Shown piece after piece: positions 13,294 to 49,535 of a stretch of 64,000 nt of DNA (the first letter of the stretch is position 1; each line of letters starts with the position of its first letter). Both the position numbers and the translations under genes were made by a program. The notes beneath the pieces are model-generated. The model saw only the letters and a list, made by a program, of their open reading frames with translations, was not told the origin of the DNA and did no database searches. Source of the DNA: Ylistrum balloti (taxonomy: Eukaryota); assembly GCF_031769215.1 (NCBI RefSeq), contig NW_026782212.1, positions 806,001-870,000 on the forward strand. The letters run 5' to 3'.

Positions 13294-16200
13294 CTGGATA
13301 AATACAAACCATATGTAATTACAAATTCTGTTCCACAATCTAGCAGAATTCAGTATTAAAGGAAATAAATAGTACACTCTGTTGTGGCAAGGGTGCGTTT
13401 ACTTATTGTTAAACTACAAATATCTATATAGCAACTGAAATACTAAATGTATTTATGGAGCTAATGTGGCTTACATTTACCTTTGATAGAAATGTAGGAA
13501 ATGCATAAAGTTTGCTTACGTTCCAAATAAAATTCCGTCTTCAAGGGTTTCCGGCAGATCTTGATTCAGGGTTTCCGGTAAATGTAAAGCAAGAACTCCC
13601 GCCACAATAGTCGCTACTCCAAACACGACTAATGGGAAGGCCTTCCCCATTTTGCCCCCGATTTTATCTCCCTGAAAGTATACAGGACAGACAGATTGTG
13701 CCAAGTTTCTAGTTTCCTACTATCTCACTTGCATGGAACACAAATAACCACCTTCTGTATAGTGTTTGCAGTATTGCGAAATTACACTTTTTTGCTATTG
13801 TCCATGAAACGGTTCCTTTCACTGATAGTATTAACACATAATGAACTATCATAAACACGAACTGTCACAATACACGTCACTTTCAGTATATTGCTAATTT
13901 ATTTGCTAGTATAAAAAAATTGCGCATTGGACGAGGTAAGCGTTTCGCCGACACATGCATCGTTGAACGTGATAGATTCGACGGGGCTTCTGTAATGGTT
14001 TTGGAAGGCATCGCCCATAGAGTAAAACAACCTTAGTGGTCCCGGATCCAAACCGCAATGCTGTTCGATACAGAGACCAGATCTCCAATCACATGTCCTT
14101 CCACTTCTCAAACGTCATAACCTAGTTTTCCAGCAAGACAATGCTTGACCGCATGTTGCTAGAGTCTGTCGTGACTTTTTTCTCATGGCATACAATGTTT
14201 GGCCCCCATATAGCCCTGACATGTCTCCCATTGAGTATCGGTGAGAAGAGCTGGACAGGCGTATTAGGAAACGTCAAACGACAAAATATCATAGGCTATT
14301 GATTGCATAATTTAATTGTACGTATAGATTCTTCCCATCCAAATCTTTAGATCTTATATATGGCATCCTCGATATCTCAGGGGTTACGATCACTTCCGCT
14401 CTCTACACCCCTGGTCATTATTGAAGGCACATCCGCAATAACTGGATTGGTTTCAGGAGAAAATAAACACCAATCACGGGCTGATACGATCCTTTTAAAG
14501 ATTACAAACTAGAGATACCTAACTTCAAAGCTATAACAATATACCGTTATGCATTCCCGAAATTCGTTTGATGTACATTAAAGTATCAAACTAGTCTTTT
14601 CGTGTTGTCTACAAGGTGTCGAACATGGAACCTTCTATTTTGCCATAACATCTTCCAGGTGCAGAGAGCGAAAATGATTGTAAACCCTGGAGTATCGAGG
14701 ATGTAGTGATCGTAACCCCTGGAGTATCGAGGATGTAGTGATTGTTACCCCTGGAGTATCGATGATGTAGTGATCGTAACCCCTGGAGTATCGATGATGT
14801 AGTGATTGTAACCCCTGGAGTATCGATGATGCAGTGATTGTAACCCCTGGAGTATCTATGATGTAGTGATTGTAACCCCTGGAGTATAGAGGATGTAGTG
14901 ATTGTAACCCCTGGAGTATAGAGGATGTAGTGATTGTAACCCCTGGAGTATCGAGGATACAGTAATTGTAACCCCTGGAGTATCGATGATGCTATATGGT
15001 GATTCAGCACGAAACAGAAAATACCAGTATTTTATGACAGTGAAACACAACGTTTTGATCCAATATAATCTTTTGTTTGTAAACCCTTTATCATGGTTTC
15101 GGAGTATGTTATAATTTTAACCTCGATAAAACCTTGCCACAGAACTGGTTGAATCAGGTTTATGGTGGCGAGATGGTTCGTGCAACAAACATGATTGATC
15201 ACGAAGAAGGATGGCTATGGAACGTGATGAAATAGAATGTAGTGTGATTTGAATAAAGAAATGTTTTCTACTTTGATCCCGCCTTGACTTGTTCCAAAAG
15301 AAAGAAGAAATGTTTGGCTATGTTACATAATACTTGTACTTTGTTATACCGGGTCTACTCTTTAAGTTATCGCTATCCTATCAATAATACTTTTCCCCTA
15401 TCAACCCCCTCCATCCAACCACTCATACTATTATTCAATCAACCCCCTCCATCCTATCCACTAATTCTCTTCCCTCATCAACCCCCTCCCCTTCCCTCCA
15501 ACCTACCACTAATACTCTTCCCCTATCAACCCCCTTCCCCTCCCCTTCATCCTACCACTAATACCTTTCCGTTATCAACCCCCTTCCCCTCCATGCTACC
15601 ACTAATACATTTCCCCTATCAACCCTCTTTCCCCTTCATCATACCGCGGGCTCATTCGATCCTTTTGAAGATTACAAAAGAGAGACACCTAACTTCAAAG
15701 CTATAACAATATACCGTTATACATTCCCGAAATTCGTTTGATGTACATTAAAGTATCAAACTAGTCTTTTCGTGTTGTCTACAAGGTGTCGCAAGTGGAA
15801 CCTTCTATTTTGCCACTGGCATGTTCCAAGTGCAGAGAGAAAGTGATTGTAACCATTAGAGTATCGATGATGTAGTGATGATTGTAACCCCTGGAGTATC
15901 GAGGATGTAGTGATCGTAGCCCCTGGAGTATCGATAATGTAGTGATTTTAACCCCTGGAGTATCGAGGATGTAGTGATTGTAACCCACGGAGTATCGATG
16001 ATGTAGTGATTGTATCCCCTGGAGTATCGAGGATGTAGTGATCGTAACCCCTGGAGTATCGAGGATGTTGTGATCGTAACCCCTGGAGTATAAAGGATGT
16101 AGTGATTGTAACCCCTGGAGTATTGAGGATGTAGTGATTGTAACCCCTGGAGTATAGAGGATGCAGTGATTGTAACCCTAGGAGTATTGAGGATGTAGTG

Positions 16201-25200: not shown

Positions 25201-27944
25201 ATTCAAAGACATCAGCACAAGGCCCGTCATTTTGATAGCAAAGATTTTTCCAGAATCAATCTGTGATTCACGCTTGAAACTTATCAGCTACTTTTTCCTG
25301 AATAGGAAAGCTGCTATCAGATTATTTATAGCTTATTTGCTTACTGCACTGTGGAGCAAATAGTCGATAAATTAACGGTGGCGTAGCTGTAAAGTTTTCA
25401 ATAAAAGGTTTGATTTATTTTCACCACGACTACGGTATAGTGACACAGGTCCCCAGTACAGTGTTATGTAAATACTTATCATCGTTAGATTGTAAATAAT
25501 ACTACCTATACCTCTATGTACTGCTTCTAATAATAATGGAGAAAACATAGCTAAAATGTCCCCAATTATTTCTGTACACAGACCTTTGTGATGGAATGAC
25601 CTATGTCCTATTACCACCAATACCTTCAAGTGAACCTGGCATATCAAAACTGCGATGTAAAATACATACACAGGAGGAAATACACTTGGTCCGGTTTAGA
25701 ATGGAACAACGGGACCGTCTTTCGAAAGTTACATTTGATCTTTGATCTGCCTAACATCAACAGAGCATGAAATGCTGATGACTTTCGTTGAGAATTGGCA
25801 GTTTAACGTAGCCAAATTCAACTTGGTCCTATGCTTACCATAAATATCAGCAAAGTAGATAGCATTCGTCACCGTTTCCTTTCCAAGAAAGATTAACAAT
25901 GGAACAAACATATGTTTGCTATCTATAATGAAGCTTTTTTCATGGAATATACGTCAAAATCAAAGACGAAATGTACGGAAAACATAAAAATGATCAAGTA
26001 TCTGGTTGACAACATGTTCGTCGAATTTGATAGTGAGATTTTTCAACAGAATATTGCCATGCCTCTGTTGACTAAACTTTTTTGTTTTCATAGGAGGCTG
26101 AATTTATCGAAAAGTGTATCAGAGCAGGTAACAAACACTTTGCAAAGTCGTTTAATTTCACTCAAGTATATTAATGACATCTTGCTTTTTAAATATCAAA
26201 ACAATCATTTACAACATCAATAGTATACACCCACCAGAATTGGAAATCAAGGACACAACATACTCTTCTAAATCGGCCGCTTATCTCGACTCTTTTTTAT
26301 AACGAAATCAACATTGACAACTTTCCACCAAGTATGGTGGTTTTGATTTCCTTAATATTAGTTTCCCACTTATTGATAGCAACATCCCTGTATCACCAAC
26401 CTAAGGTGCTGACATGTCGCAGTTGATTGCATATTCAATTGCCTGTTCCCATTATCACGATTATCATTCAAGAAGTCGTCAACTGACGGACATACTCATT
26501 ACACGTGGTTTTAAAAGATGCAAGTTAATGAAACTTTTTACGGTCGTCATACTGGTGTCATTGAGAAATATTCCATTTCTTTATGCGAACCTGGACGTGT
26601 TTTATGCTCGTTAGTTTGCCTGTTAGTTCCGTTGTTGTATACCTTATTCGCCTTTGAGAACGTGATATTACTTTCTTGTATTGACCAAGATTTACCTGGC
26701 GATATTGCCGCTGAAGCAGAGCACGCTTACTCTTCCGGAACATCTGGCCTTATTCTGCTTGTACTTTTAAGAAGTCTCGGTGAAATACCTTCAAGCCTTT
26801 TAATTAATTCAGACATTTTGACATTGTCTATCAATAAGAAGGAAATATATTAAAAACCGAAGACAAACAAAATAGCTACCTTTGATGTAAATGTTTCTTT
26901 AAACACATCGTCACTGTAAACCCATTCAGTACATTGTATCTTTGTTGCATTGATTGGGTGACTGGAGTTGTCGAACGTAACTGACGTAACGTTGTAGACA
27001 AACAAGTGACACTGGTCGTATAAGTAGGTCTCATCCGACGACGGAGGTATAAACTTGTTGATGAGTGTAAGGTGGTCGTCATTCTGTATATGATAAGTGT
27101 CATTATCATAGCCTGGTATCTTGCATCTGTAACGAAAGGTCAAAAGAAGTATCACTATTGAGTAAATAGGATCCTCACATCAAGTTGTATTCTCGACCTC
27201 GAGATACTACAATCACGCAACACTTCCATACGCAAATTGATTTAAAGCTGATCTAATAACGACAGTTATTGAAGATTGACAATGTTAAGTATATGTTGAT
27301 CGAGTTTCAATCATTCATCAAACACACAATGAAAAGTTGAAGCATTTCTCTTAAGGTTAATGTATGTGTTTCTAAATATACGGCCCATAGAATATCAAAA
27401 CATTTAAAAATTGTACAGTTTCCCTTTCTCTGCAATTACAGCCCCTGTCACTATGATACATATATATTTAGCGTGTTTGGTAAATGTATACTCATCTTAG
27501 TTGTGAAAAGTCATATTTAGTTAGGTAGCATCATACATGTCCCAGCTAGATTAGTTTTGAATAGAAGGCGGGTTTTTTCCAAGAATAGATAAATAGATAG
27601 ATGAATAAGTAGGATATTTTAACTTGTTTACTTTTTGTTGTAGTAGTGTATTAGAAAACCAAATTAAAGTTTGTAAACATTTGCTTCTTTAAAACTCAAC
27701 GGCATATATATTTTATCGATCTTTTTATTTATTTAACTTATGATGTAATTGTGTTGCGTTACAACAGGCTGTGAAATCAGAAACTCTCTGATTAGGCTCA
27801 CCTGTGATCTGGTGTATAGAGGAGCATCGCAGAAATAACCCCAAAAAGCCCGACAAACACTGAGGCTACACAAATAAGCAAATATAAAATCCTCTGGTAT
27901 GTTCCAAATGCTCCAAGTTTAGCAAATATTTTCTCGGTCTCCAT
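13173..27944 (-). CDS. SLC22: SLC22 family organic cation/anion/zwitterion transporter (Orct-like), 10 coding exons, 574 aa: complement(join(13173..13293,13520..13671,18872..19053,19465..19691,20132..20356,21178..21346,21645..21799,22777..22880,26880..27126,27802..27944))
   Basis: All nine introns are GT-AG with compatible phases. Exon lengths 143+247+104+155+169+225+227+182+152+121=1725 nt with no internal stop. Family motifs: [68 protein letters not shown]. The 104/155/169-nt exon series matches the SLC22 gene structure as I know it. Confidence 0.95.
13520..13671 (-). CDS. SLC22: SLC22 exon 9 ([18 protein letters not shown]...[21 protein letters not shown])
   Basis: Acceptor tttcag, donor gtaagc, 152 nt. 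Confidence 0.93.
13926..14277 (+). mobile_element. Tc1-family transposase relic (DDE domain) in SLC22 intron 8
   Basis: [41 protein letters not shown] (14128-14148), YSPDMSPIE (14212-14235), ELDRRIR. Stops and frameshifts are present. Confidence 0.9.
14675..14991. repeat. 32-bp minisatellite, about 10 copies (gtagtgattgtaacccctggagtatcgaggat)
   Basis: Period read directly from the sequence (14703, 14735, ...). Confidence 0.97.
15843..16643. repeat. 32-bp minisatellite, about 25 copies, same unit; a taggagtattgagg variant dominates the 3' half
   Basis: Direct reading. Confidence 0.97.
18872..19053 (-). CDS. SLC22: SLC22 exon 8 ([15 protein letters not shown]...[34 protein letters not shown])
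   Basis: Acceptor ttacag, donor gtaagc, 182 nt. Confidence 0.93.
19273..19315 (+). mobile_element. tRNA-derived SINE head fragment (B box) in SLC22 intron 7
   Basis: gcctttca...cagggttcgattccccgaacgggg contains a canonical GGTTCGATTCC B box. No A box or full cloverleaf. Confidence 0.55.
19465..19691 (-). CDS. SLC22: SLC22 exon 7 ([36 protein letters not shown]...DRVGRK...)
   Basis: Acceptor ctttag, donor gtaagt, 227 nt. Confidence 0.93.
20132..20356 (-). CDS. SLC22: SLC22 exon 6 (LLPESPRWL...RTLVIFVN/W)
   Basis: PESPRWL motif, acceptor tcgaag, donor gtaggt, 225 nt. Confidence 0.92.
20510..21015. repeat. Old degenerate tandem repeat of about 60 bp in SLC22 intron 5
   Basis: Recurrent ccacatgtgg(t)acccgtctaat...catagagtatcc...cattgtgttc. 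Confidence 0.75.
21178..21346 (-). CDS. SLC22: SLC22 exon 5 ([13 protein letters not shown]...[22 protein letters not shown])
   Basis: 169 nt, acceptor ttacag, donor gtgaga. Confidence 0.93.
21645..21799 (-). CDS. SLC22: SLC22 exon 4 ([10 protein letters not shown]...[11 protein letters not shown])
   Basis: 155 nt, acceptor caccag, donor gtacgt. Confidence 0.93.
22777..22880 (-). CDS. SLC22: SLC22 exon 3 ([35 protein letters not shown])
   Basis: 104 nt, acceptor ttgtag, donor gtaagt. Confidence 0.93.
24249..24420 (+). mobile_element. Helentron-associated (HINE/DINE-1-like) non-autonomous element 5' part, in SLC22 intron 2
   Basis: T-run start, subterminal inverted repeat AGGTCATCT (24252-24260) / AGATGACCT (24275-24283), then a ccgtcgtccg...cgtaaactttt microsatellite-like tract. 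This matches the HINE layout I know from bivalves. Confidence 0.5.
25912..26790 (+). mobile_element. Penelope-like retroelement relic in SLC22 intron 2 (antisense to the host gene)
   Basis: [88 protein letters not shown], with frameshifts and deletions. Tail motif gaagcagagcacgcttactcttccggaacatctggcc at 26713-26749. Confidence 0.85.
26880..27126 (-). CDS. SLC22: SLC22 exon 2, large extracellular loop ([11 protein letters not shown]...DQCHLF...[18 protein letters not shown])
   Basis: Acceptor ttacag, donor gtagct. Conserved loop cysteines and several N-x-S/T sequons (NDT, NVT, NSS, NAT). Confidence 0.93.
27802..27944 (-). CDS. SLC22: SLC22 exon 1 ([48 protein letters not shown])
   Basis: ATG at 27944, donor GTGAGC after CACAG, phase 2. 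Not in the supplied ORF track because it is under 60 aa. Confidence 0.9.
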
Positions 27945-28254
27945 TGCATTGGTTTTGTGAGGAATATTTTTGCTAGGTTGAATATATGCGCACAGATCTA
28001 CTATTTCTCTGATAACGTTTACTTGATATCACACTTAGTGATGTACTTTAGCTTAAAGAGCCAGACCCACTCCTCAACCGATATCATTTTATATAAACAA
28101 AAATTCATGATTTACTACTTTTCTCGGGTAGCAAAAGTCCTGACTAACCCTGTAATACCGCAATTTTAAAGTAAATCGCTACCAATCTAACGTAACAAAT
28201 ACTTGTTTAAAAAAGTATTTGAAACGACTCAGTGCTAATTCATAATTATGCGGG

Positions 28255-28444: not shown

Positions 28445-29631
28445 AATCATATTCATAAATACTCTTATCATCGAATATTCGCTTTAGATAGATCCATTTC
28501 GCGATGTTCTCTATGCTCGTTGCCGTATCGTAGCTCCCGTTTGAGGGCCTCTTTACAATTAATCGTAGTTTTTATCGTAATCTGCACGTTTATGTGTCAT
28601 ATCTAAGATCTAAGATGTGATCAATATATACGTTAGATGATTTCCATATAGGATATATAGAGTACTAATTGCATTTATCGGTAAAATCTCTTTACAAATG
28701 ATGTCACATGGACGAACTTCTCACCTCTTCCTCCATTTTTGTTTTGGTTCTGACCGCGTCTGATTGTATCATGTGACTTTTCCTCATCAATATTGATTAA
28801 CGACACTAATTCCGGCACCGATATCTCCAGTACCCTTTCAATTTCAAGTTCGAAACTTTATACAAGTTTTTATTGATATATTATCTATTAGTATAAAACA
28901 ATATTTCTGTCAAAAATTAATGAAAAAATATCTATAACGGAGTGGGTCTGGCTCTTTAACTGTTCAAATATAATGGATATGTGACATACTGCCTATAGAA
29001 GCATCTATTATAGATATGAATGCATATATTGTATACAAATTCATGTGCAAATGATATCATTCCGTGGAACTCTGAATATAAATCTAATAAACATCTCCCT
29101 TTCATATGTGAACTAAACGAACAATAAGGTACTATTTCGTACTGATAAAAATTAAACTCGCACATCATCAAGTATTGATATCTATGGGAAAAAGCCCTGT
29201 TAAGCAGAAAGTCCGTACTCATATCATATACCGAGTACATATTGTTATTGAAATTTCATGTACAATGGTTAGGAATATTGCCGAGAAAATAATACTTAAT
29301 CTTACCTGTGTTCTGGTGTACCAAGAAGGATTGCTGAAATTACGGCGAATAAACCCACAAACGCTGATGAAATACAGATAAGAGAGTACAGCCACTTTTG
29401 GTAACGACCAAAATCTCCTAGTTTTTCTAAAATAGCATCAAAATCCATCACGGTAAACTGATACTTTGGTATAGTTGAAGGAATACAGTGACTTATGACC
29501 AGACAGGGTGAGGGTTAATTACTGATAACAGTATCAGGAATAAATGGTTCACTAGCTATTCTGGAATTTATAAACAAAACAATATACTGGTGAATTAACG
29601 GGCGGAGTATTGTACATTACATCGTTGTTAA

Positions 29632-31192
29632 ATGTGATATATGTACTCGGTATATATGATCTACATCATGTACTCATTATATGTGATCTACATCATGTAC
29701 TCGTTATATGTGAACATCATGTACTCATTATATGTGATCTACATCATGTACTCGGTATATGTGATCTACATCATGTACTCGGTATATGTGATCTACATCA
29801 TGTACTCATTATATGTGATCTACATCATGTACTCGGTATATGTGATCTACATCATGTACTCGGTATATGTGAACATCATGTACACGTTATATATGATCTA
29901 CACCATGTACTCGCTATATGTGATCTACATCATGTACTCGGTATATGTGATCTACATCATGTACTCGGTATATGTGATCTACATAATGTACTCGGTATAT
30001 GTGATCTACATCATGTACTCGGTATATGTGATCTACATAATGTATTCGTGATATGTGATCTACATAATGTACTCGTTATATATGATCTACATCATGTACT
30101 CGGTATATGTGATCTACATCATGTACTCGGTATATGTGATCTACATAATGTACTCGGTATATGTGATCTACATCATGTACTCGGTATATGTGATCTACAT
30201 AATGTACTCGTTATATGTGATCTACATAATGTACTCGTTATATATGATCTACATCATGTACTCGGTATATGTGATCTACATTATGTACTCGGTATATGTG
30301 AACATCATGTACTCGTTATATGTGATCTACATCATGTACTCATTATATGTGATCTACATCATGTACTCGGTATATGTGATCTACATCATGTACTCGTTAT
30401 ATGTGATCTACATCATGTACTCGGTATATGTGATCTACATTATGTACTCGGTATATGTGATCTATATCATGTACTCGGTTTATGTGATCTACATCATGTA
30501 CTCGGTATATGTGATCTACATCATGTACTCATTATATGTGATCTACATCATGTACTCTGTATATGTGATCTACATCATGTACTCGGTATATGTGATCTAC
30601 ATTATGTACTCGTTATATGTGAACATCATGTACTCGTTATATGTGATCTACATCATGTACTCGGTATATGTGATCTACATCATGTACCCGGCATATGTGA
30701 ACATCATGTACTCTGTATATGTGAACATCATGTACTCGGTATATGTGATCTACATCATGTACTCGGTATATGTGATCTACATCATGTACTCGATATATGT
30801 GAACATCATGTACTCGGTTTATGTGATCTACATCATGTACTCGGTATATGTGATCTACATCATGTACTCGGTATATGTGAACATCATGTACTCGGTATAT
30901 GTGATCTACATCATGTACTCGATACATGTGATCTACATAATGTACTCGTTATATGTAATCTACATAATGTACTCGTTATATGTGATCTACATCATGTACT
31001 CGTGATATGTGATCTACATAATGTACTCTTTATATGTGATCTACATAATGTACTCGGTATATGTAATCTACATAATGTACTCGTTATATGTGATCTACAT
31101 CATGTACTCATTATATGTGATCTACATCATGTACTCGGTATATGTGATCTTCATAATGTACTCGGTATATGTGATCTACATAATGTACTCAT
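29632..31192. repeat. 27-bp minisatellite (atgtgatctacatcatgtactcggtat) with an interspersed 24-bp variant, about 58 units
   Basis: Direct reading. The 9-residue period of the ORF track (CDLHHVLGI / CEHHVLGI) reflects the 27/24-bp units. Confidence 0.98.
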
Positions 31193-32574
31193 TAACTCAA
31201 TAGTTATTCTTATATCACAGCCAGTAAGAACAGGTAATTAATTCTAACGAAGTAATCTAGATAACATTGTTCTATATCACAGATGATCATCGTAACAAGA
31301 GAAAATCCCACCTATGCTTACCTTAAACAATACTGAAAAGTGTCTTTGATTTACTTTCTTCCTTTTAAAGATAATCCTATTGAAGACGTCGACAGCTAAT
31401 CGTAGTAGAGACGATACCTACGATATAGCAAATGGAAGAGTCTTGGTGTCAAAAAACTGTAACCAATTATTTTATTTATTCTTTCATTTAAGAATGTGAC
31501 TGTACTTCCCGTATTACCGGCAATAGCAAGCAGATAGTTAATGATATGCAAACATATTTGTTTGACAACTCTTTAGTTTTTGCCCGCTTGTTCTGGTGTG
31601 AGTATCAGAGAAGCAAAACACATGCGGAAAAAAACCTTTAAATACGAATATTACATTATAGTGAACATTTAATAGAATATGATACTTATTTAATTGTATC
31701 AAATTTATAAATAACTTCAAGTGCATACATCCTCGTGAACCAGAAATGCTCAGATATGTCACATTCCTCTTGCATATAAAAGCAATGAACTGTACATGTT
31801 TTAAAAAGATGCCAAACTAAAGAAAAATCACAAAAATGTCATTTCGTCGAACAGTTACAAAATGTTTCAGCTCCGTAAATTATGCAAAATTCAAAACTTT
31901 AATTACTGCTTACTTCATAATGGAGAACATTTTGTTCATCTTTTCAAACATCAAATGAGTATAAGAAGAATTTATATTCGATATATTCTGCAACCACATA
32001 ACTGTGCTACTGGATATTTGATGTGTATATTCTGAACAGCACTCAATTGAATGCAAGCATGGCATGTATGGTTTACCAAACATCTGGGTCTGAAGTCCAT
32101 CAACAGGGTCTACCACCTTCAATCTCAAACAATTGTACAAAAGACCGACAAGATTTAACGTTATGGCGATCCGATTGTCTATCATTTTAACATTTGTTTA
32201 TTGAGTTCATCATCAACAGTAAAATCCTAGTTATGAGCGTCAAAAACCCGGGAACGATGATACGCTGTTTGGATATGTATGTTCAGACTCTCTCTGACGT
32301 AATTTTATGTCCTTGAATTTTTTTGTTATCTTTTGTGTGCTCATTCTTTTTTTTTTTTTTTTTTTTTCTTATTTTGCGATAATCATGGATGACCGACAAA
32401 CATGATACTGTGTCATAATTGAGCTGATATATTGCATTGGCTATTGCCAAGGTAGGTATTATAAAAAAATATGTTTTAATGCTAATTGTTTTTTCACACT
32501 TATCGGTGAAACAATTTGATTTATACGTCCATATCTTGATTCCTAGGCCTATATGATTCTTGAAAGATTCATTT

Positions 32575-44191: not shown

Positions 44192-46941
44192 CTGAAAAGT
44201 CAAATTCATAAGACATGACAATAATGAAACATCCCCAACTAGTATAAAATATATCATCGTGACCAACTATGTGATCCCGGTATATATAAATTCACTCACC
44301 AGACATGAATGATTAACATTATACCTTCAGTGTTACAGAAATATACATGGTTGCTTTCTACTCAACTCAGTCTACTTTACAGTACCCGTAATTAAAACAA
44401 TTCAACATCATGAAAACCAGTGTAGTTTATGTTGAATTCTGTAAGAAAATTCTAAATTAAACGTCGTTTTCAAAAGTAATGTTAAGCTATTTCCATTTTG
44501 TTGTTACTGTAAAGTAGGCAAGCGTATTATTTACTTTGATGTTAAAATCTATTTTTAAAATTCCCTTCATTAGTCTCGCAGCTGTTTCATGATATTGATA
44601 ACTGCGTATAATTGCTTCTGGTCAGGAAAATACTTGGAATTTGAAATATATTAATGTACGAGAAATGTCGGTATTTAAATAAGTGGAGGAGAGTAGAGTT
44701 TGTTGTATACTACTCTTTATGTAGTCGGTAATTATAGGAGTAATCAGCATATATAAAATCAAACTGTAAATCATAAAATGTTGACTTAAATAGGCAATGA
44801 AATGACTTTTATATATTTTCAATGTTCATTCTACTCACCAAATTTAACTTCCTGGTTTGGTTCATAGTTATTAATTAATGTCTAATCAGGGTAATCAAAT
44901 ACGGACGCTATCAGATTATATTTTACTGAGTTTAAACATGCAAGATCTAATGTCGATAGGATGATTTGAACTAGTACACATGGCGGAAATTGAAACTTAA
45001 AGGTAACTTGGGATTGTCCTAATCTGGATACAAACAGAGTAGTGTCAAACAAGTATACTAGTAGGCAGACCTGTTTCAAAATCGCAGGTTTAACTAAAAC
45101 TTGACATGGTCAAAACGAAAACATAATTAATGTATTAGTTATATCAGATTTATTCCAAGACAAAATAGTGTGTACAATTCCAGCTGATACAAACTGTTCT
45201 AACAAAATCATATGCACATATATTCAAAGATTTCACATTGTTCACAAAGTGACAATTTTATAACTTCAACGAAAAAGACATACTATTACCAGTTTTCATG
45301 GTGAGCACACTAATGCCTGTAGTTGGTAATTATACATTTTTTTTCTAAACAGTTTTATTGTATTAAAGATGATGGAGCTCTTTCTGGTGTTAATTAAAAT
45401 ATATCTCGGTTAATTGAGCGTTTAGCACACGTTTATTTCCATAAGCCAATGCATGGGTAGTAAAAGCGATATTTTCCATCTCAAAGATTATCAGCCTCAT
45501 ATATGCAAACACTTATACATTCCAGAAAGTCATTTTTCTTCGAGTATAAAACTCTGATATAAAGATTAATCCTTTTTTCTCGGATCTATGTAAATGAGCT
45601 CATTTTAATCCTCTTTGATTTGTGTTGTTTTTTGTAACAGTTCTTATTTTCTTTCAATAGAGAAGTAAGTCCCTTATACCATATTTTGGCCATATCCTGG
45701 TTTGTTGTTTCGTTAAAATGTTGTTTTTTTTTCAAAAGATAAAACATCACTTAATCACTATTCTTACCATTCAAATTTGTTTGTTAAAAAATGTGGACCA
45801 GGGAAATGTAATGTCCTGCTTCACTGTCGGGAAGCACATTTACAGAAGTGTAAAAAAACAAAATAAAAGCATGCTTTGTGCACTTCACCATATCAGTTTA
45901 GGTGTAACTCACACTTCCGTGTATGCTGTTACCTTTGGCCCGCCTTTTACCTGAAACATAGACCTCCTCTGTATTAACATAGACAACATTTTGTCTCATA
46001 CAGTAAGTCTTGAATCCATTGTGTAATTTACCATTGCTCTCCTTTTGAAACTTCTACGACGACTTTACCTCTGTACGTTCAACCAGATCAATTTTATTCA
46101 TAAGTGTTTCCCCTTGCCTTTGAACCCTACAGTATAATGATATGGGAGAGGGCTTGGAAAATAGCGGTAAAAGCCTTGCATTTCACTAACTTGGAGGGTT
46201 TTGTACCTTCATTATGGGTAATGGGGGAAATCGATTAATCAAATATAGCACTTCTGATGGCTATTTCCAAAACTTATTACTGGAAATGGATAGGGATGCA
46301 CAGTTGTAGCTTGATATGCTCACGGTATGTGTGACTAGTTTAAGACAATATCCAAATTTCAGTTTTAGTATTAGCATGTTATCAAGATTAAATCACAAAG
46401 CTGTGGGTCATCCACTGTTCTTTTGTATTTTATCTTATCGTTGATAGGAACTTTACCTGTACCTGTATCTACCTGTAAAGCTTTATATGTGACTATTTAA
46501 TTAGACAGACACATGTATAATATGAGGTAAGATTCATCTCGAATAAAACAAGCGAAGGTAACAGTATGACTGATGATACAAGCTTTGTTATATGTGATGG
46601 AAACAAGCCTCAAGCAATACAATATGTTTGAAATGGAGACCGGTTAGAGCTGAACTCTGTTCTCCCTCACACGTTATAGTTTGAGACGTAGAACGTAAAC
46701 CGTAGCATCATTTTATATTACTATAGAACATATTTATTTCATATAAACCAGGTATGTAACCTTTGCCTAAGACAAGTGGCTTTCCTTTAGAAACTCTTCT
46801 TTCAGCTCTACGCAAGTGCAATTCATCTATGTCAGCTATATTCACCATATACAGTAATAAAACTGATTTTCTTCATGGTTATAACATATCCTTTTCATTC
46901 TTTAATACGAATTTAATTCTGTTTCAGACAATGTATACACG

Positions 46942-48330
46942 ATGGCGTTCGACTTCATCAACAATCTTGAGCCACGTTTGATCATTGACTTTCTGTACGA
47001 ACAGGAAGTGATAACACTAGATGAGCTAAGCACACTTAATGATACAGACCTAAAACAAATAGACAGGCGATGGCAGTTACTCGATAGCGTAGCAGCACGG
47101 GGACAGAAAGCATTTTGTATATTTAAACAAGCAATTGAAAATACACCGGAACTGTCTGAGTTATCAAATGAACTCAAAATCGTTGATTTTACAACGTTTA
47201 AACAATCCCTTCAGAGTAAACCAGGAGTGTCTCGATTAACAAGCACGACAAAAATATCGAGGAAACGGCGAAGAGCATGTGAAAATGAAAACAGAAAATC
47301 ACGAGACAGTGAACAATATAAAAGAGCTAGAAAAGATACAAAGCAACTTGTTGAGGCCACACGTGTTCCTCGACCGGTGTCATCGGAGCGAAAACATATT
47401 AAGCATGTTGAGAAAACATTTGACATTCTTGCTGACATGTACAACAATGGACAAAGTAACGAATTTGCAATAGAATGTATCAAATTACAAGCAGAAAGAC
47501 CTAACTGTAATGATACATTGTTCACAGTGGCGTACATGCAAGTCTTGTTTGCCCAACGAAAGTTAGATTATGTTTCGGAAAAGACATACCTTGTTGTCGC
47601 AAAGAACCTTATGCCAAAAACCAAAGATCCTCTGTATTCCCAATTGCTAGTATTATCTCCGCAAACAAGAAAATATCTATTGCAGAAGAAGTTTGCTAAA
47701 CTGCAAAATATAATCGATGACAGAAAAATGATTGTTCAGTCCGATCCCTTGCATTGCACCGGAAGAGGTGCAGCATGGGTTTACTACAACGAAGGGAGAA
47801 GTAACGCGTTACAGCTAGATATGATCAGTGACAAAAGTGAAGGCGAAGCAAAAGCTGTAGATGTAATGCGAGAACGCACTCTGGAAAGCTACAATAGATC
47901 CTTACAACATTTCAATGAGGAGAAAGGCCAAGACAGGATATACGGGGCAGCCTATGTAAAGTTCCAGTTAGTGGTTCTATTACTAAGATGTGGTTGTAAT
48001 GGACTAGGCATGGGCCGCAAAACAAAAGTTCCAAAGAAAGACGAGAAAATTGCTGACTTTATCATGAAAGAATATGAAGAATCGAATTCAATAACTTGTC
48101 CTATTCTTACCATGTACTTCAGCATTGCGAATTGCGATCGCATGTTTAGGAAAAATCTCTTGAAAGAAGCATTAAGAAATGCTGAAACAGCACTCATCCT
48201 CGCTAAAGAGAATATGACTGAGTATATACAGCCCATACAAAATCGCGTTGACTATCTCCGACGCAATACGGCTCAGTTTACAAAGCCGTTAATTTTAGAA
48301 GCAGACTCGTCGACAGATTTACCTTATTAG
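46942..48330 (+). CDS. Uncharacterised 462-aa protein: CARD-like death fold (about aa 1-75), basic NLS-like linker, alpha-helical TPR-like C-terminal domain
   Basis: 1389-nt ORF with no repeat content in AT-rich DNA. The N-terminus fits the CARD pattern (LEPRLIIDFLYEQEVITLDE...DRRWQLLDSVAARGQKAFCIFKQAIE). A strong acceptor (tttaattctgtttcag, ending 46927) lies 14 nt upstream with the frame open (NVYT), so the true N-terminus may be on an upstream exon. Confidence 0.88.
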   Translation: MAFDFINNLEPRLIIDFLYEQEVITLDELSTLNDTDLKQIDRRWQLLDSVAARGQKAFCIFKQAIENTPELSELSNELKIVDFTTFKQSLQSKPGVSRLTSTTKISRKRRRACENENRKSRDSEQYKRARKDTKQLVEATRVPRPVSSERKHIKHVEKTFDILADMYNNGQSNEFAIECIKLQAERPNCNDTLFTVAYMQVLFAQRKLDYVSEKTYLVVAKNLMPKTKDPLYSQLLVLSPQTRKYLLQKKFAKLQNIIDDRKMIVQSDPLHCTGRGAAWVYYNEGRSNALQLDMISDKSEGEAKAVDVMRERTLESYNRSLQHFNEEKGQDRIYGAAYVKFQLVVLLLRCGCNGLGMGRKTKVPKKDEKIADFIMKEYEESNSITCPILTMYFSIANCDRMFRKNLLKEALRNAETALILAKENMTEYIQPIQNRVDYLRRNTAQFTKPLILEADSSTDLPY

Positions 48331-48462
48331 TCTGCGGTGACTCCTAAACTGAGTTACATCAATAATCTGCTGCATTAGGCTGCTGTGTAAGACATTAAGT
48401 AACTTCAATAGCCTGCTGTGACAGAGTAACAAATTAAGTAACTTCAATAGGCTGCTATGACA

Positions 48463-49060
48463 GAGTTACTTAGTCAGACTACTGTGACAGACTCATCTGC
48501 TGAGTTACTTAGTAAGACTACTGTGACAGACTCATCTGCTGAGTTACTTAGTCAGACTACTGTGACAGACTCATCTGCTGAGTTACTTAGACTACTGTGA
48601 CAGACTCATCTACTGAGTTACTTAGTCAGACTCCTGTGATAGACTCATCTGCTGAGTTACATGGTCAGACCACTGTGACAAACTCATCTGCTGAGTTACT
48701 TTGCCAGACTCCTGTGATAGACTCATCTGCTGAGTTACATGGTCAGACCACTGTGACAAACTCATCTGCTGAGTTACTTTGCCAGACTACTGTGACAGAC
48801 TCATCGGCTGAGTTACATAGTCAGACTCCTGTGATAGACTCATCTGCTGAGTTACATGGTCAGACCACTGTGACAAACTCATCTGCTGAGTTACTTTGCC
48901 AGACTACTGTGACAGACTCATCTGCTGAGTTACTTTGTCAGACTACTGTGACAGACTCATCTGCTGATTTACTTAGTCAGACTACTGTGACAGACTCATC
49001 TGCTGAGTTACCTAGTCAGACTACTGTGACAGAAAGCTCTGCATGTGACAAACTCCTCAG
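48463..49060. repeat. 39-bp minisatellite, subfamily A (ttacttagtcagactactgtgacagactcatctgctgag)
   Basis: Direct reading. Alternating variants (catggtc...cactgtgacaaac / ctttgcc...ctcctgtgatagac) give a higher-order pattern. Confidence 0.95.
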
Positions 49061-49216
49061 CTGAATTACCCTATAAATCAATTATGACAGACACTGTAAC
49101 CGAGTTACCTAGACTACCATGATGATTCATTTGCTGATTTACCTGTGACAGATACCTCTACAATGTTCGTGAAAGATTACTCAGTTTATCTGTCTTTTAC
49201 AGTTGTTTCATTGTAG

Positions 49217-49535
49217 CAGACTCCTCAGCTGAGTAACATCATCACACTACAATGACAGACTCCGCAGCTGAGTAACATCATCACACTACAATGACAGACT
49301 CCGCGGCTGAGTAACATCATCACACTACAATGACAGACACCGCAGCTGAGTAACATCATCACACAACAATGACAGACTCCGCAGCTGAGTAACATCATCA
49401 CACTACAATGACAGACACAGTAGCTGAGTAACATCATCACAAACAATGACAGACTCCGCAGCTGAGTAACATCATCACACTACAATGACAGACTCCGCGG
49501 CTGAGTAACATCATCACACTACAATGACAGACTCC
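49217..49535. repeat. 39-bp minisatellite, subfamily B (gctgagtaacatcatcacactacaatgacagactccgca), about 8 copies
   Basis: Direct reading. Shares gctgagt and tgacagactc with subfamily A at the same spacing. Confidence 0.95.

What the first reader, a model, noticed from the sequence alone, without database searches (positions are those of the whole stretch)
46942..48330. Single-exon CARD + NLS + TPR-like protein with no NACHT, protease or helicase domain
Seen: an intact 462-codon ORF among decayed elements. The N-terminal 75 aa fit a CARD pattern. A basic linker (KISRKRRR...YKRARK) resembles a nuclear localisation signal. The roughly 300-aa helical C-terminus has TPR-like segments (AAWVYYNEGRSNALQL...TLESYNRSLQHF; YFSIANCDRMFRKNLLKEALRNAETALILAKE). 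Established: CARDs nucleate caspase and innate-immune signalling, and are usually coupled to NACHT/NB-ARC, RIG-I helicase or caspase domains. Inference: a direct CARD-TPR sensor/adaptor, possibly nuclear, from a lineage-expanded invertebrate immune family that I cannot name. This is the best protein-level candidate for an undescribed system in the window.
Basis: partly seen in the sequence, partly recalled or inferred. Interest (0 to 1): 0.72.

Follow-up and report, generated by a model that had tools for sequence, protein, structure and literature searches.

The report
Scallop CARD plus TPR-like adaptor gene
This is a real, conserved scallop gene that joins a caspase-recruitment (CARD) domain through a basic, nuclear-signal-like linker to a TPR-like helical domain; it is a shortened offshoot of an undescribed protein family found across molluscs, brachiopods and annelids that pairs Apaf-1-like CARDs with this domain and has no ATPase, protease or helicase part.

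Summary

Pecten, Mizuhopecten, Ylistrum and one unnamed Logan sequence each have one orthologue. All have a single coding exon, a conserved 5' splice acceptor and a conserved overlapping uORF. dN/dS is 0.12-0.28.

The C-terminal domain defines a family of 57 cluster representatives. All named members are lophotrochozoan and all are annotated as uncharacterised. The only other Pfam domain found in them is CARD. The canonical members carry two CARDs, the first of Apaf-1/RAIDD type, and are 64-65% identical between scallop, limpet and Lingula. The window gene belongs to a scallop-specific clade that is shortened and fast-evolved.

I infer a nuclear-capable CARD adaptor or sensor without an NTPase. 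It is not MAVS, an NLR, an RLR or a CARD-only decoy. Expression in this species is unproven. A second haplotype carries mostly nonsynonymous changes, which I cannot explain.

The parts
46917..46927 (+). Polypyrimidine tract and CAG splice acceptor, which implies an upstream non-coding 5' exon
   Evidence: Sequence read. TTTCAG/TTCCAG is conserved at the same position in the Pecten, Mizuhopecten and Ylistrum loci. The Logan contig L004 diverges exactly at this junction and lacks the pyrimidine tract, as a spliced mRNA would.
46931..46981 (+). Short out-of-frame upstream ORF (16 codons) whose ATG lies 11 nt before the main ATG and which overlaps the start of the CDS
   Evidence: The uATG is invariant in position in all five orthologous sequences, with uORFs of 8-16 codons.
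46942..48330 (+). Complete coding sequence, 462 codons plus stop, in a single coding exon
   Evidence: The orthologous gene models are also single-exon.
46942..47178 (+). CARD (residues 1-79, six helices)
47179..47370 (+). Basic, poorly conserved linker (residues 80-143), predicted disordered or a single helix
   Evidence: The segment analysed (residues 76-143) has pI 10.75 and 19 K+R. pLDDT is below 50. dN/dS is 0.27-0.62, yet the basic character is kept in all orthologues.
47251..47274 (+). Basic cluster 1 (residues 104-111, KISRKRRR), which matches a monopartite NLS pattern
   Evidence: K[KR]x[KR] match at residue 108. Equivalent clusters occur in all orthologues.
47320..47334 (+). Basic cluster 2 (residues 127-131, KRARK); Y126, K127 and R130 are invariant in the clade
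47371..48282 (+). TPR-like 14-helix superhelix (residues 144-447), the family-defining domain
48283..48327 (+). Acidic Ser/Thr-rich C-terminal tail (residues 448-462), ending S-T-D/E-x-P-Y in three of the five clade members (Ylistrum has -SY followed by an extension; P0005 lacks it)
   Evidence: Alignment. The last 20 residues have pI about 4. Low pLDDT.
48463..49535 (.). Two 39-bp tandem-repeat arrays (48463-49033 with 14.7 copies, 49217-49535 with 8.2 copies) just downstream of the stop codon. They may lie in the 3' UTR, but whether they belong to the transcript is untested.

Best explanation
Shown: a functional, single-coding-exon scallop gene encodes an N-terminal CARD, a basic NLS-like linker and a C-terminal seven-hairpin TPR-like superhelix. 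It is the pectinid-specific, one-CARD, shortened paralogue of an undescribed lophotrochozoan family. That family's canonical form is CARD1 (Apaf-1/RAIDD type), a CxxC segment, CARD2, a linker and the same TPR-like domain. Inferred: it works as an NTPase-free CARD adaptor or sensor. The TPR-like groove binds a peptide or protein partner. That binding, or the clustering it causes, brings the CARD into homotypic assembly with another CARD protein. The most likely partners are a CARD-bearing initiator caspase (caspase-2/9-like), Apaf-1 or the canonical two-CARD paralogue. In function this resembles RAIDD, a small two-domain bridge, with a TPR dock in place of the death domain. The conserved basic clusters make a nuclear or nucleolar site of action plausible. 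The conserved overlapping uORF suggests that translation is kept low or regulated.
For: Gene reality and constraint: an intact ORF; one orthologue in each of three named scallop genera at 65-67% identity, plus a Logan contig at 56%; dN/dS 0.12-0.28 overall and 0.08-0.23 in the TPR-like domain; a conserved splice acceptor and uATG. CARD. TPR-like ligand-binding fold: and the Atlas structure rows. The nearest structures are peptide or degron receptors and sensor domains: APPBP2, Rap/NprR/PlcR/AimR, LGN and MalT domain III. Dedicated CARD partnership: 35 of 58 family members hit CARD, 15 also hit CARD_2, and no other Pfam domain occurs. Apoptotic-type ancestry: the canonical CARD1 profile hits Apaf-1 at 1e-14 (aligned 1-89 to 1-89), RAIDD at 5e-14, then CARD8, CED-3, CED-4 and caspase-9. 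The window CARD aligns best to CARD1. Deep conservation of the canonical form, 64-65% identity from Pecten to Lottia and Lingula, argues for a specific conserved partner. Basic clusters are conserved despite linker divergence, and there is no TM segment.
Against: There is no functional, localisation or interaction datum for any family member. No RNA evidence exists for this species: the only run holding the sequence is genomic. The TPR matches are generic (TM about 0.5, 6-13% identity), so the ligand class is unknown. The window clade's CARD is divergent, and its best solved match is the decoy ICEBERG. In a second haplotype 9 of 10 listed coding SNPs are nonsynonymous, including W279G at a family-wide near-invariant site. 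That fits poorly with strong current constraint. dS between genera exceeds 1, so the dN/dS values are approximate.
Confidence: 0.5

Rival explanations
1. It is a negative regulator or decoy. The one-CARD short form would cap or sequester CARD assemblies, or heterodimerise through its TPR-like domain with the canonical two-CARD paralogue. It would damp signalling as ICEBERG/COP proteins or LGP2-like truncated paralogues do.
For: It lost CARD2 and most of the linker relative to the canonical form. The best solved match of its CARD is ICEBERG. It sits on a long stem branch of 1.74 substitutions per site followed by constraint, the pattern of a changed function after duplication. The canonical paralogue coexists in every annotated scallop genome in the hit list.
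Against: Known CARD decoys are CARD-only proteins of about 90-100 aa, whereas this protein keeps a fully conserved 300-aa TPR-like domain. Similarity to ICEBERG is weak (E 1.8e-6 for the profile, 23% identity). Nothing was tested.
Confidence: 0.22
2. It is a nuclear scaffold unrelated to cell death or immunity. The TPR-like domain would bind a nuclear protein such as a histone, a ubiquitin-ligase substrate or a transcription factor, and the CARD would serve only as an oligomerisation module.
For: NLS-like basic clusters are conserved. Structural neighbours include APPBP2 (a CRL2 substrate receptor), APC/C TPR subunits, TSK/BRU1 bound to H3.1 and NASP histone chaperones. It is a single copy with steady purifying selection, unlike a typical fast-turnover immune gene.
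Against: Those structural matches are generic TPR similarity. CARDs are, by established knowledge, almost always used in caspase, NF-kB or innate-immune assemblies. The ancestral CARD is Apaf-1/RAIDD-like.
Confidence: 0.15
3. In this species it is a dispensable or decaying gene: an ORF still open but no longer maintained, or a presence/absence-type locus.
For: 9 of 10 listed coding differences in a second individual are nonsynonymous. These include K253T at a position invariant in the clade and W279G at a position conserved in at least 90% of the family. This fits omega = 1 (P = 0.34) far better than omega = 0.15 (P = 0.0007). There is no RNA evidence. The surroundings are repeat-rich.
Against: The window allele keeps every clade-invariant residue. 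The ORF has no indel in the second individual. Orthologues are intact in four other scallop lineages with omega of 0.12-0.28. The splice site and uORF are conserved. The SNP sample is small, and it comes from one contig at a depth of about 11.
Confidence: 0.08

Closest known systems
RAIDD/CRADD (CARD + death domain adaptor of the PIDDosome)
   Same: Both are small, non-enzymatic, two-domain adaptors with an N-terminal apoptotic-type CARD. RAIDD is among the best solved matches: E 5e-14 for the canonical CARD1 profile and 1.4e-3 for the window clade. By established knowledge, PIDDosome and caspase-2 activation can take place in the nucleus or nucleolus.
   Different: The second domain is a 300-aa TPR-like superhelix, not a death domain. 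No PIDD-like partner is known. It is an analogy of function, not a member of that family.
Apaf-1 / CED-4 (CARD + NB-ARC + WD40 apoptosome scaffolds)
   Different: There is no NB-ARC/STAND NTPase, so nucleotide-driven oligomerisation is absent. The repeats are TPR-like, not WD40.
STAND/NLR proteins with TPR sensors (for example MalT domain III, and bacterial and invertebrate NACHT-TPR or NB-ARC-TPR proteins)
   Different: The central NTPase switch is missing altogether, and there is no detectable sequence relationship.
RRNPP-type and LGN-type peptide-binding TPR domains (NprR, Rap, PlcR, AimR, LGN/Pins)
   Different: Identity is 6-13%, they are bacterial or polarity proteins, they have no CARD, and the similarity is at the level of the general fold only.
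ICEBERG/CARD18 and other CARD-only decoys
   Same: ICEBERG is the best solved sequence match of the window clade's CARD (E 1.8e-6; Foldseek prob 1.0).
   Different: Decoys consist of the CARD alone. This protein has a conserved linker and a large conserved C-terminal domain.
MAVS, including oyster CgMAVS (CARD + Death + TM; PMC5557890)
   Same: Both have an N-terminal CARD and a non-enzymatic remainder. Some canonical family members give sub-threshold CARD_2 (PF16739) hits.
   Different: There is no C-terminal transmembrane anchor (maximum hydropathy 1.36), no death domain and no proline-rich region. CgMAVS has a different architecture. The CARD is nearer to Apaf-1/RAIDD than to MAVS/RIG-I.

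Membership tests
CARD (Pfam PF00619, death-fold superfamily) | Sequence match to the family model above the curated threshold | tested here: met
   35.1 bits against a gathering cutoff of 23.9, E 1.4e-8, residues 5-68. All four orthologues carry the same precomputed hit.
CARD (Pfam PF00619, death-fold superfamily) | Six-helix antiparallel bundle superposable on solved CARDs | tested here: met
CARD (Pfam PF00619, death-fold superfamily) | Homotypic CARD-CARD binding or filament formation | not testable with these tools
   Needs pull-down, yeast two-hybrid, EM or a multimer prediction.
TPR clan (tetratricopeptide-like helical repeats) | Match to a TPR sequence model above threshold | tested here: not met
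   No TPR Pfam hit for the window protein even at E 10. Only three relatives give sub-threshold TPR_2, TPR_12 or TPR_15 hits.
TPR clan (tetratricopeptide-like helical repeats) | Right-handed superhelix of helix-turn-helix hairpins | tested here: met
MAVS | C-terminal transmembrane anchor | tested here: not met
   The maximum 19-residue Kyte-Doolittle mean is 1.36 and lies inside a TPR helix; the tail is acidic.
NLR / Apaf-1-type STAND proteins | NACHT or NB-ARC NTPase domain between the effector and the repeats | tested here: not met
   No such Pfam hit in the window protein or in any of 58 family members. The linker is 64-68 residues long and disordered.
RIG-I-like receptors | DExD/H helicase and C-terminal regulatory domain after the CARDs | tested here: not met
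CARD-only decoys (ICEBERG/COP/INCA) | A protein that consists essentially of one CARD | tested here: not met
   462 aa with a conserved 300-aa C-terminal domain.
New lophotrochozoan CARD + TPR-like family (defined here) | C-terminal domain matching the family profile end to end, with the near-invariant residues G274, W279, F324, G335, C350, D399, R403 and R435 | tested here: met
   The profile search gives 45 representatives at E below 1e-10 that cover the whole domain. The window protein has all of these residues.
Classical nuclear localisation signal | K-K/R-x-K/R basic cluster in an exposed region | tested here: met
   Matches at residues 108 and 127, in a linker with pLDDT below 50, and present in all orthologues. 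This is a pattern match only; nuclear import itself cannot be tested here.

The most novel reading that the evidence does not exclude
The family is an NTPase-free death-fold signalling platform. A TPR-like sensor binds a ligand such as a peptide, degron or danger signal, and directly drives Apaf-1-type CARD assembly and initiator-caspase activation. That would be an apoptosome or inflammasome logic without the STAND switch, conserved across Lophotrochozoa. Scallops would have added a nuclear one-CARD derivative, the window gene, as a separate sensor or regulator.
Probability: 0.2. Interest if true: 0.78.

Novelty: new variant of a known kind. Interest (0 to 1): 0.56.

Why it matters
CARD signalling is understood almost entirely from vertebrate, fly and worm proteins. 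In those, the CARD is coupled to an NTPase, helicase, kinase, protease, coiled coil or another death-fold domain. Here the CARD is coupled directly and exclusively to a TPR-like domain. The family is conserved at 64-65% identity across three named lineages (scallop, limpet, brachiopod), has no Pfam model for the C-terminal domain, no curated name and no paper in the searchable library. It is therefore a testable candidate for a missing adaptor in lophotrochozoan apoptosis or innate immunity, in animals (scallops, clams, mussels) where mass mortality and disease matter economically. The scallop-specific short form gives a natural comparison of a one-CARD, NLS-rich form with the two-CARD form, which could be used to dissect the mechanism.

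Tried and rejected
1. MAVS homology. Rejected: there is no TM segment, oyster CgMAVS is CARD + Death + TM, and the CARD type is Apaf-1/RAIDD-like.

2. Retrogene origin of the single-exon CDS. Rejected as an inference: the canonical Pecten paralogue also has a single coding exon, so an intronless CDS is a family trait.

3. RNA evidence. The only run holding the sequence (X1) proved to be genomic DNA of another individual, because its contigs cover the intergenic DNA as well. No conclusion on expression is possible.

4. Sequence search of the C-terminal profile against solved structures. Only chance-level hits.

5. Foldseek on the full-length model. It was swamped by the low-confidence C-terminus, and only ICEBERG was informative.

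6. Word-indexed search with the full-length family profile A5. It returned only the scallop clade and one fragment, and added nothing.

7. Synteny by tblastx against the three orthologous loci. Beyond the gene itself, only weak or repeat-like matches appeared. The MFS transporter that neighbours the Mizuhopecten gene was not detected in the window.

8. Transposon-protein origin. Rejected: there is no Pfam or structural match to one, the gene lies at orthologous single-copy loci with a conserved splice site, and it is under purifying selection.

9. The careful maximum-likelihood tree did not finish in the time allowed. The quick tree (SH-aLRT) was used. The join of P0031 with the window clade was flagged as possible long-branch attraction.

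10. Literature searches for CARD-TPR, for the locus names, and for tandem CARD with bivalve and TPR found nothing relevant.

Full report
**1. The observation**

The local sequence is 36-40% G+C. At that composition a stop codon is expected about every 14 codons. The chance of a 462-codon open frame is about 1e-15 per position and about 1e-10 over the window. Only five ORFs of 150 aa or more exist in the 64 kb. Of the other four, one is a low-complexity repeat by Pfam and one lies within the 39-bp tandem array downstream of this gene.

**2. Domains**

- also MDA5, RIG-I, caspase-1 and ASC

The death fold is therefore confirmed.

*Linker.* Residues 80-143 model at low confidence (pLDDT below 50). 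The segment analysed, residues 76-143, is strongly basic, with pI 10.75 and 19 K+R. It has K[KR]x[KR] matches at residues 108 and 127.

*C-terminal domain.* Residues 144-462 have no Pfam hit even at E 10 and no sequence relative among solved structures. With only five sequences the C-terminal model was poor. With a 51-sequence family alignment it reached pLDDT 90 and pTM 0.87, as 14 helices forming seven hairpins.
- Foldseek against the PDB gives only generic TPR superhelices: NprR at E 2e-3 and TM 0.5, then KLC, LGN and Rap.
- The ESM Atlas gives TPR_12-type clusters.

The domain is TPR-like by fold, with no close solved relative. It is not a TPR by the sequence models. No transmembrane segment exists.

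**3. Is it a real gene?**

One full-length orthologue each was found in Pecten maximus (67% identity), Mizuhopecten yessoensis (65%), Ylistrum balloti (66%) and an unnamed Logan assembly (56%). All are annotated as uncharacterised or as CARD domain-containing. The three genomic orthologues have single coding exons.

Pairwise Nei-Gojobori dN/dS:

| Region | dN/dS |
|---|---|
| Whole protein | 0.12-0.28 |
| CARD | 0.11-0.38 |
| TPR-like domain | 0.08-0.23 |
| Linker | 0.27-0.62 |

dS exceeds 1 in most pairs, so the ratios are approximate.

Fifteen nucleotides upstream of the ATG lies a polypyrimidine tract and a CAG acceptor. This acceptor is conserved in all four genomes. The Logan contig L004 diverges exactly at that junction and lacks the pyrimidine tract, as a spliced mRNA would. 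This is suggestive evidence for transcription in a relative, not proof.

An out-of-frame ATG 11 nt before the start codon is invariant in all five sequences and opens an overlapping uORF of 8-16 codons.

For this species no RNA run was found. The only holder, X1, is genomic, because its contigs also cover the intergenic DNA.

**4. The family**

A profile of the C-terminal domain, searched exhaustively against 1.84 billion representatives, found 57 proteins at E up to 1e-3, of which 45 are at E up to 1e-10. Most are 600-1000 aa with the domain at the C-terminus.

Pfam scans show one or two N-terminal CARDs and nothing else. Of 58 members, 35 hit CARD, 15 also hit CARD_2, and three give sub-threshold TPR hits.

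All named members are lophotrochozoan and all are uncharacterised:
- bivalves: Pecten, Mizuhopecten, Ylistrum, Argopecten, Mytilus, Dreissena, Mercenaria, Mya, Mactra, Potamilus, Sinanodonta
- gastropods: Lottia, Haliotis
- a chiton: Liolophura
- the brachiopod Lingula
- the annelid Capitella

The canonical form is CARD1, a short CxxC-containing segment, CARD2, a linker and the TPR-like domain. Its C-terminal domain is 64-65% identical between Pecten, Lottia and Lingula. That is unusually slow evolution for a putative immune or death protein.

A profile of canonical CARD1 hits the Apaf-1 CARD at E 1e-14, aligned end to end. It then hits RAIDD (5e-14), CARD8, CED-3, CED-4 and caspase-9. RIG-I, MDA5 and MAVS-type CARDs score far lower. 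The window clade's CARD is more divergent: ICEBERG 1.8e-6, CARD11 1e-3, RAIDD 1.4e-3. It aligns best to CARD1 of the canonical Pecten paralogue.

In a quick maximum-likelihood tree the five scallop short forms make a clade with 100% support on a stem of 1.74 substitutions per site, beside or within the canonical group. Branches inside the clade are short. This pattern indicates a duplication in the scallop lineage, loss of CARD2 and most of the linker, a burst of change, and then purifying selection.

Pecten maximus has at least four family members, and Mizuhopecten and Ylistrum at least three. The family is modest in size, not massively expanded.

**5. Mechanism**

*Shown.* The architecture, the folds, the exclusive CARD association, the CARD type, the selection regime, and the conserved basic clusters and uORF.

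*Inferred.* The nearest folds of the TPR-like superhelix are peptide or degron receptors and sensor arms, so it probably binds a partner. The CARD then engages another CARD protein. Because no NTPase is present, assembly must be driven by ligand- or partner-induced clustering, or by relief of autoinhibition.

Given the Apaf-1/RAIDD-type ancestry, the most likely clients are CARD-bearing initiator caspases, Apaf-1 or the canonical paralogue. The functional analogy is RAIDD, with a TPR dock in place of a death domain. Basic clusters are retained in every orthologue although the linker sequence drifts. This makes nuclear import, or nucleic-acid or nucleolar association, plausible. Lingula's canonical protein also has an RRRHKRRRR cluster before the domain.

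I give this adaptor/sensor reading about 0.5. The rivals are a decoy or regulator of the canonical pathway (0.22), a nuclear scaffold unrelated to death or immunity (0.15), and a gene that is decaying in this species (0.08).

**6. An unexplained point**

In the second individual's contig the ORF has no indel, but 9 of the 10 listed coding differences are nonsynonymous. They include K253T at a position invariant in the clade and W279G at a position conserved in at least 90% of the family.

This pattern fits omega = 1 (P = 0.34) and not omega = 0.15 (P = 0.0007). Up to three differences in that contig were not listed. Even if all of them were synonymous coding changes, P would be 0.015 at omega 0.15.

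The window allele keeps the conserved residues. The cause could be relaxed constraint, a decaying allele, diversifying selection or contig error. Only population data can decide.

**7. Comparison and novelty**

It is a CARD protein by every test I could run. It is not MAVS: it has no TM segment, and oyster CgMAVS is CARD + Death + TM (PMC5557890). It is not an NLR or Apaf-1-type protein, because it has no NTPase. It is not an RLR, because it has no helicase. It is not a CARD-only decoy.

Searches of the paper library for CARD-TPR, for the locus names and for related terms found no description. Subscription journals are not covered, so an earlier description cannot be excluded.

I rate it a new variant of a known kind: a death-fold adaptor with an undescribed, dedicated TPR-like partner domain and no NTPase. 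Interest is moderate to high for the family, and somewhat lower for this particular derived copy, because function and expression remain untested.

Noticed in passing
window 46931-46981: An out-of-frame upstream ATG lies 3 nt after the splice junction and 11 nt before the start codon. Its position is invariant in all five scallop sequences. It opens an overlapping uORF of 8-16 codons, which may act as a translational brake.
   Followed up: partly
window 47062-48168 (second haplotype in run X1): 9 of 10 listed coding SNPs are nonsynonymous, including K253T and W279G at conserved positions. The ORF stays open. This pattern is at odds with the long-term dN/dS of about 0.15.
   Followed up: partly
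window 48387-49535: Two different 39-bp tandem arrays (14.7 and 8.2 copies, 88-93% matches), plus a 2-copy 39-bp repeat, start 57 nt after the stop codon. They create spurious ORFs on both strands (48597-49064 +, 49225-49446 -).
   Followed up: partly
window 29610-31241: The second-longest ORF (543 aa) is a low-complexity histidine-rich repeat. Its Pfam hit to Plasmodium_HRP is compositional. It is most likely a minisatellite, not a gene.
   Followed up: partly
P0010, P0009, P0019 (canonical family members), between CARD1 and CARD2: A short conserved CxxC-containing segment (CSKC, CEEC, CKKC) sits between the two CARDs of the canonical proteins. It could be a metal-binding or redox motif, and it is absent from the window protein.
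   Followed up: no
L002 1-10152 (Mizuhopecten locus): An MFS sugar-transporter gene model on the opposite strand reaches into the first 150 nt of the Mizuhopecten CARD gene. tblastx found no counterpart in the window, so local synteny is not conserved, or the overlap is an annotation artefact.
   Followed up: partly
window 27801-27947, 29305-29448 and 13522-13674: These short stretches have translated similarity (43-59% identity over about 50 aa) to flanks of the Mizuhopecten and Ylistrum loci. They are probably shared transposon fragments.
   Followed up: no
one search hit list: No oyster (Crassostrea or Ostrea) or cephalopod protein appears among the 54 named or unnamed relatives of the canonical form, although many other bivalves do. 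This could be lineage loss or a limit of the search.
   Followed up: no
It is unrelated to this gene and was not examined.
   Followed up: no
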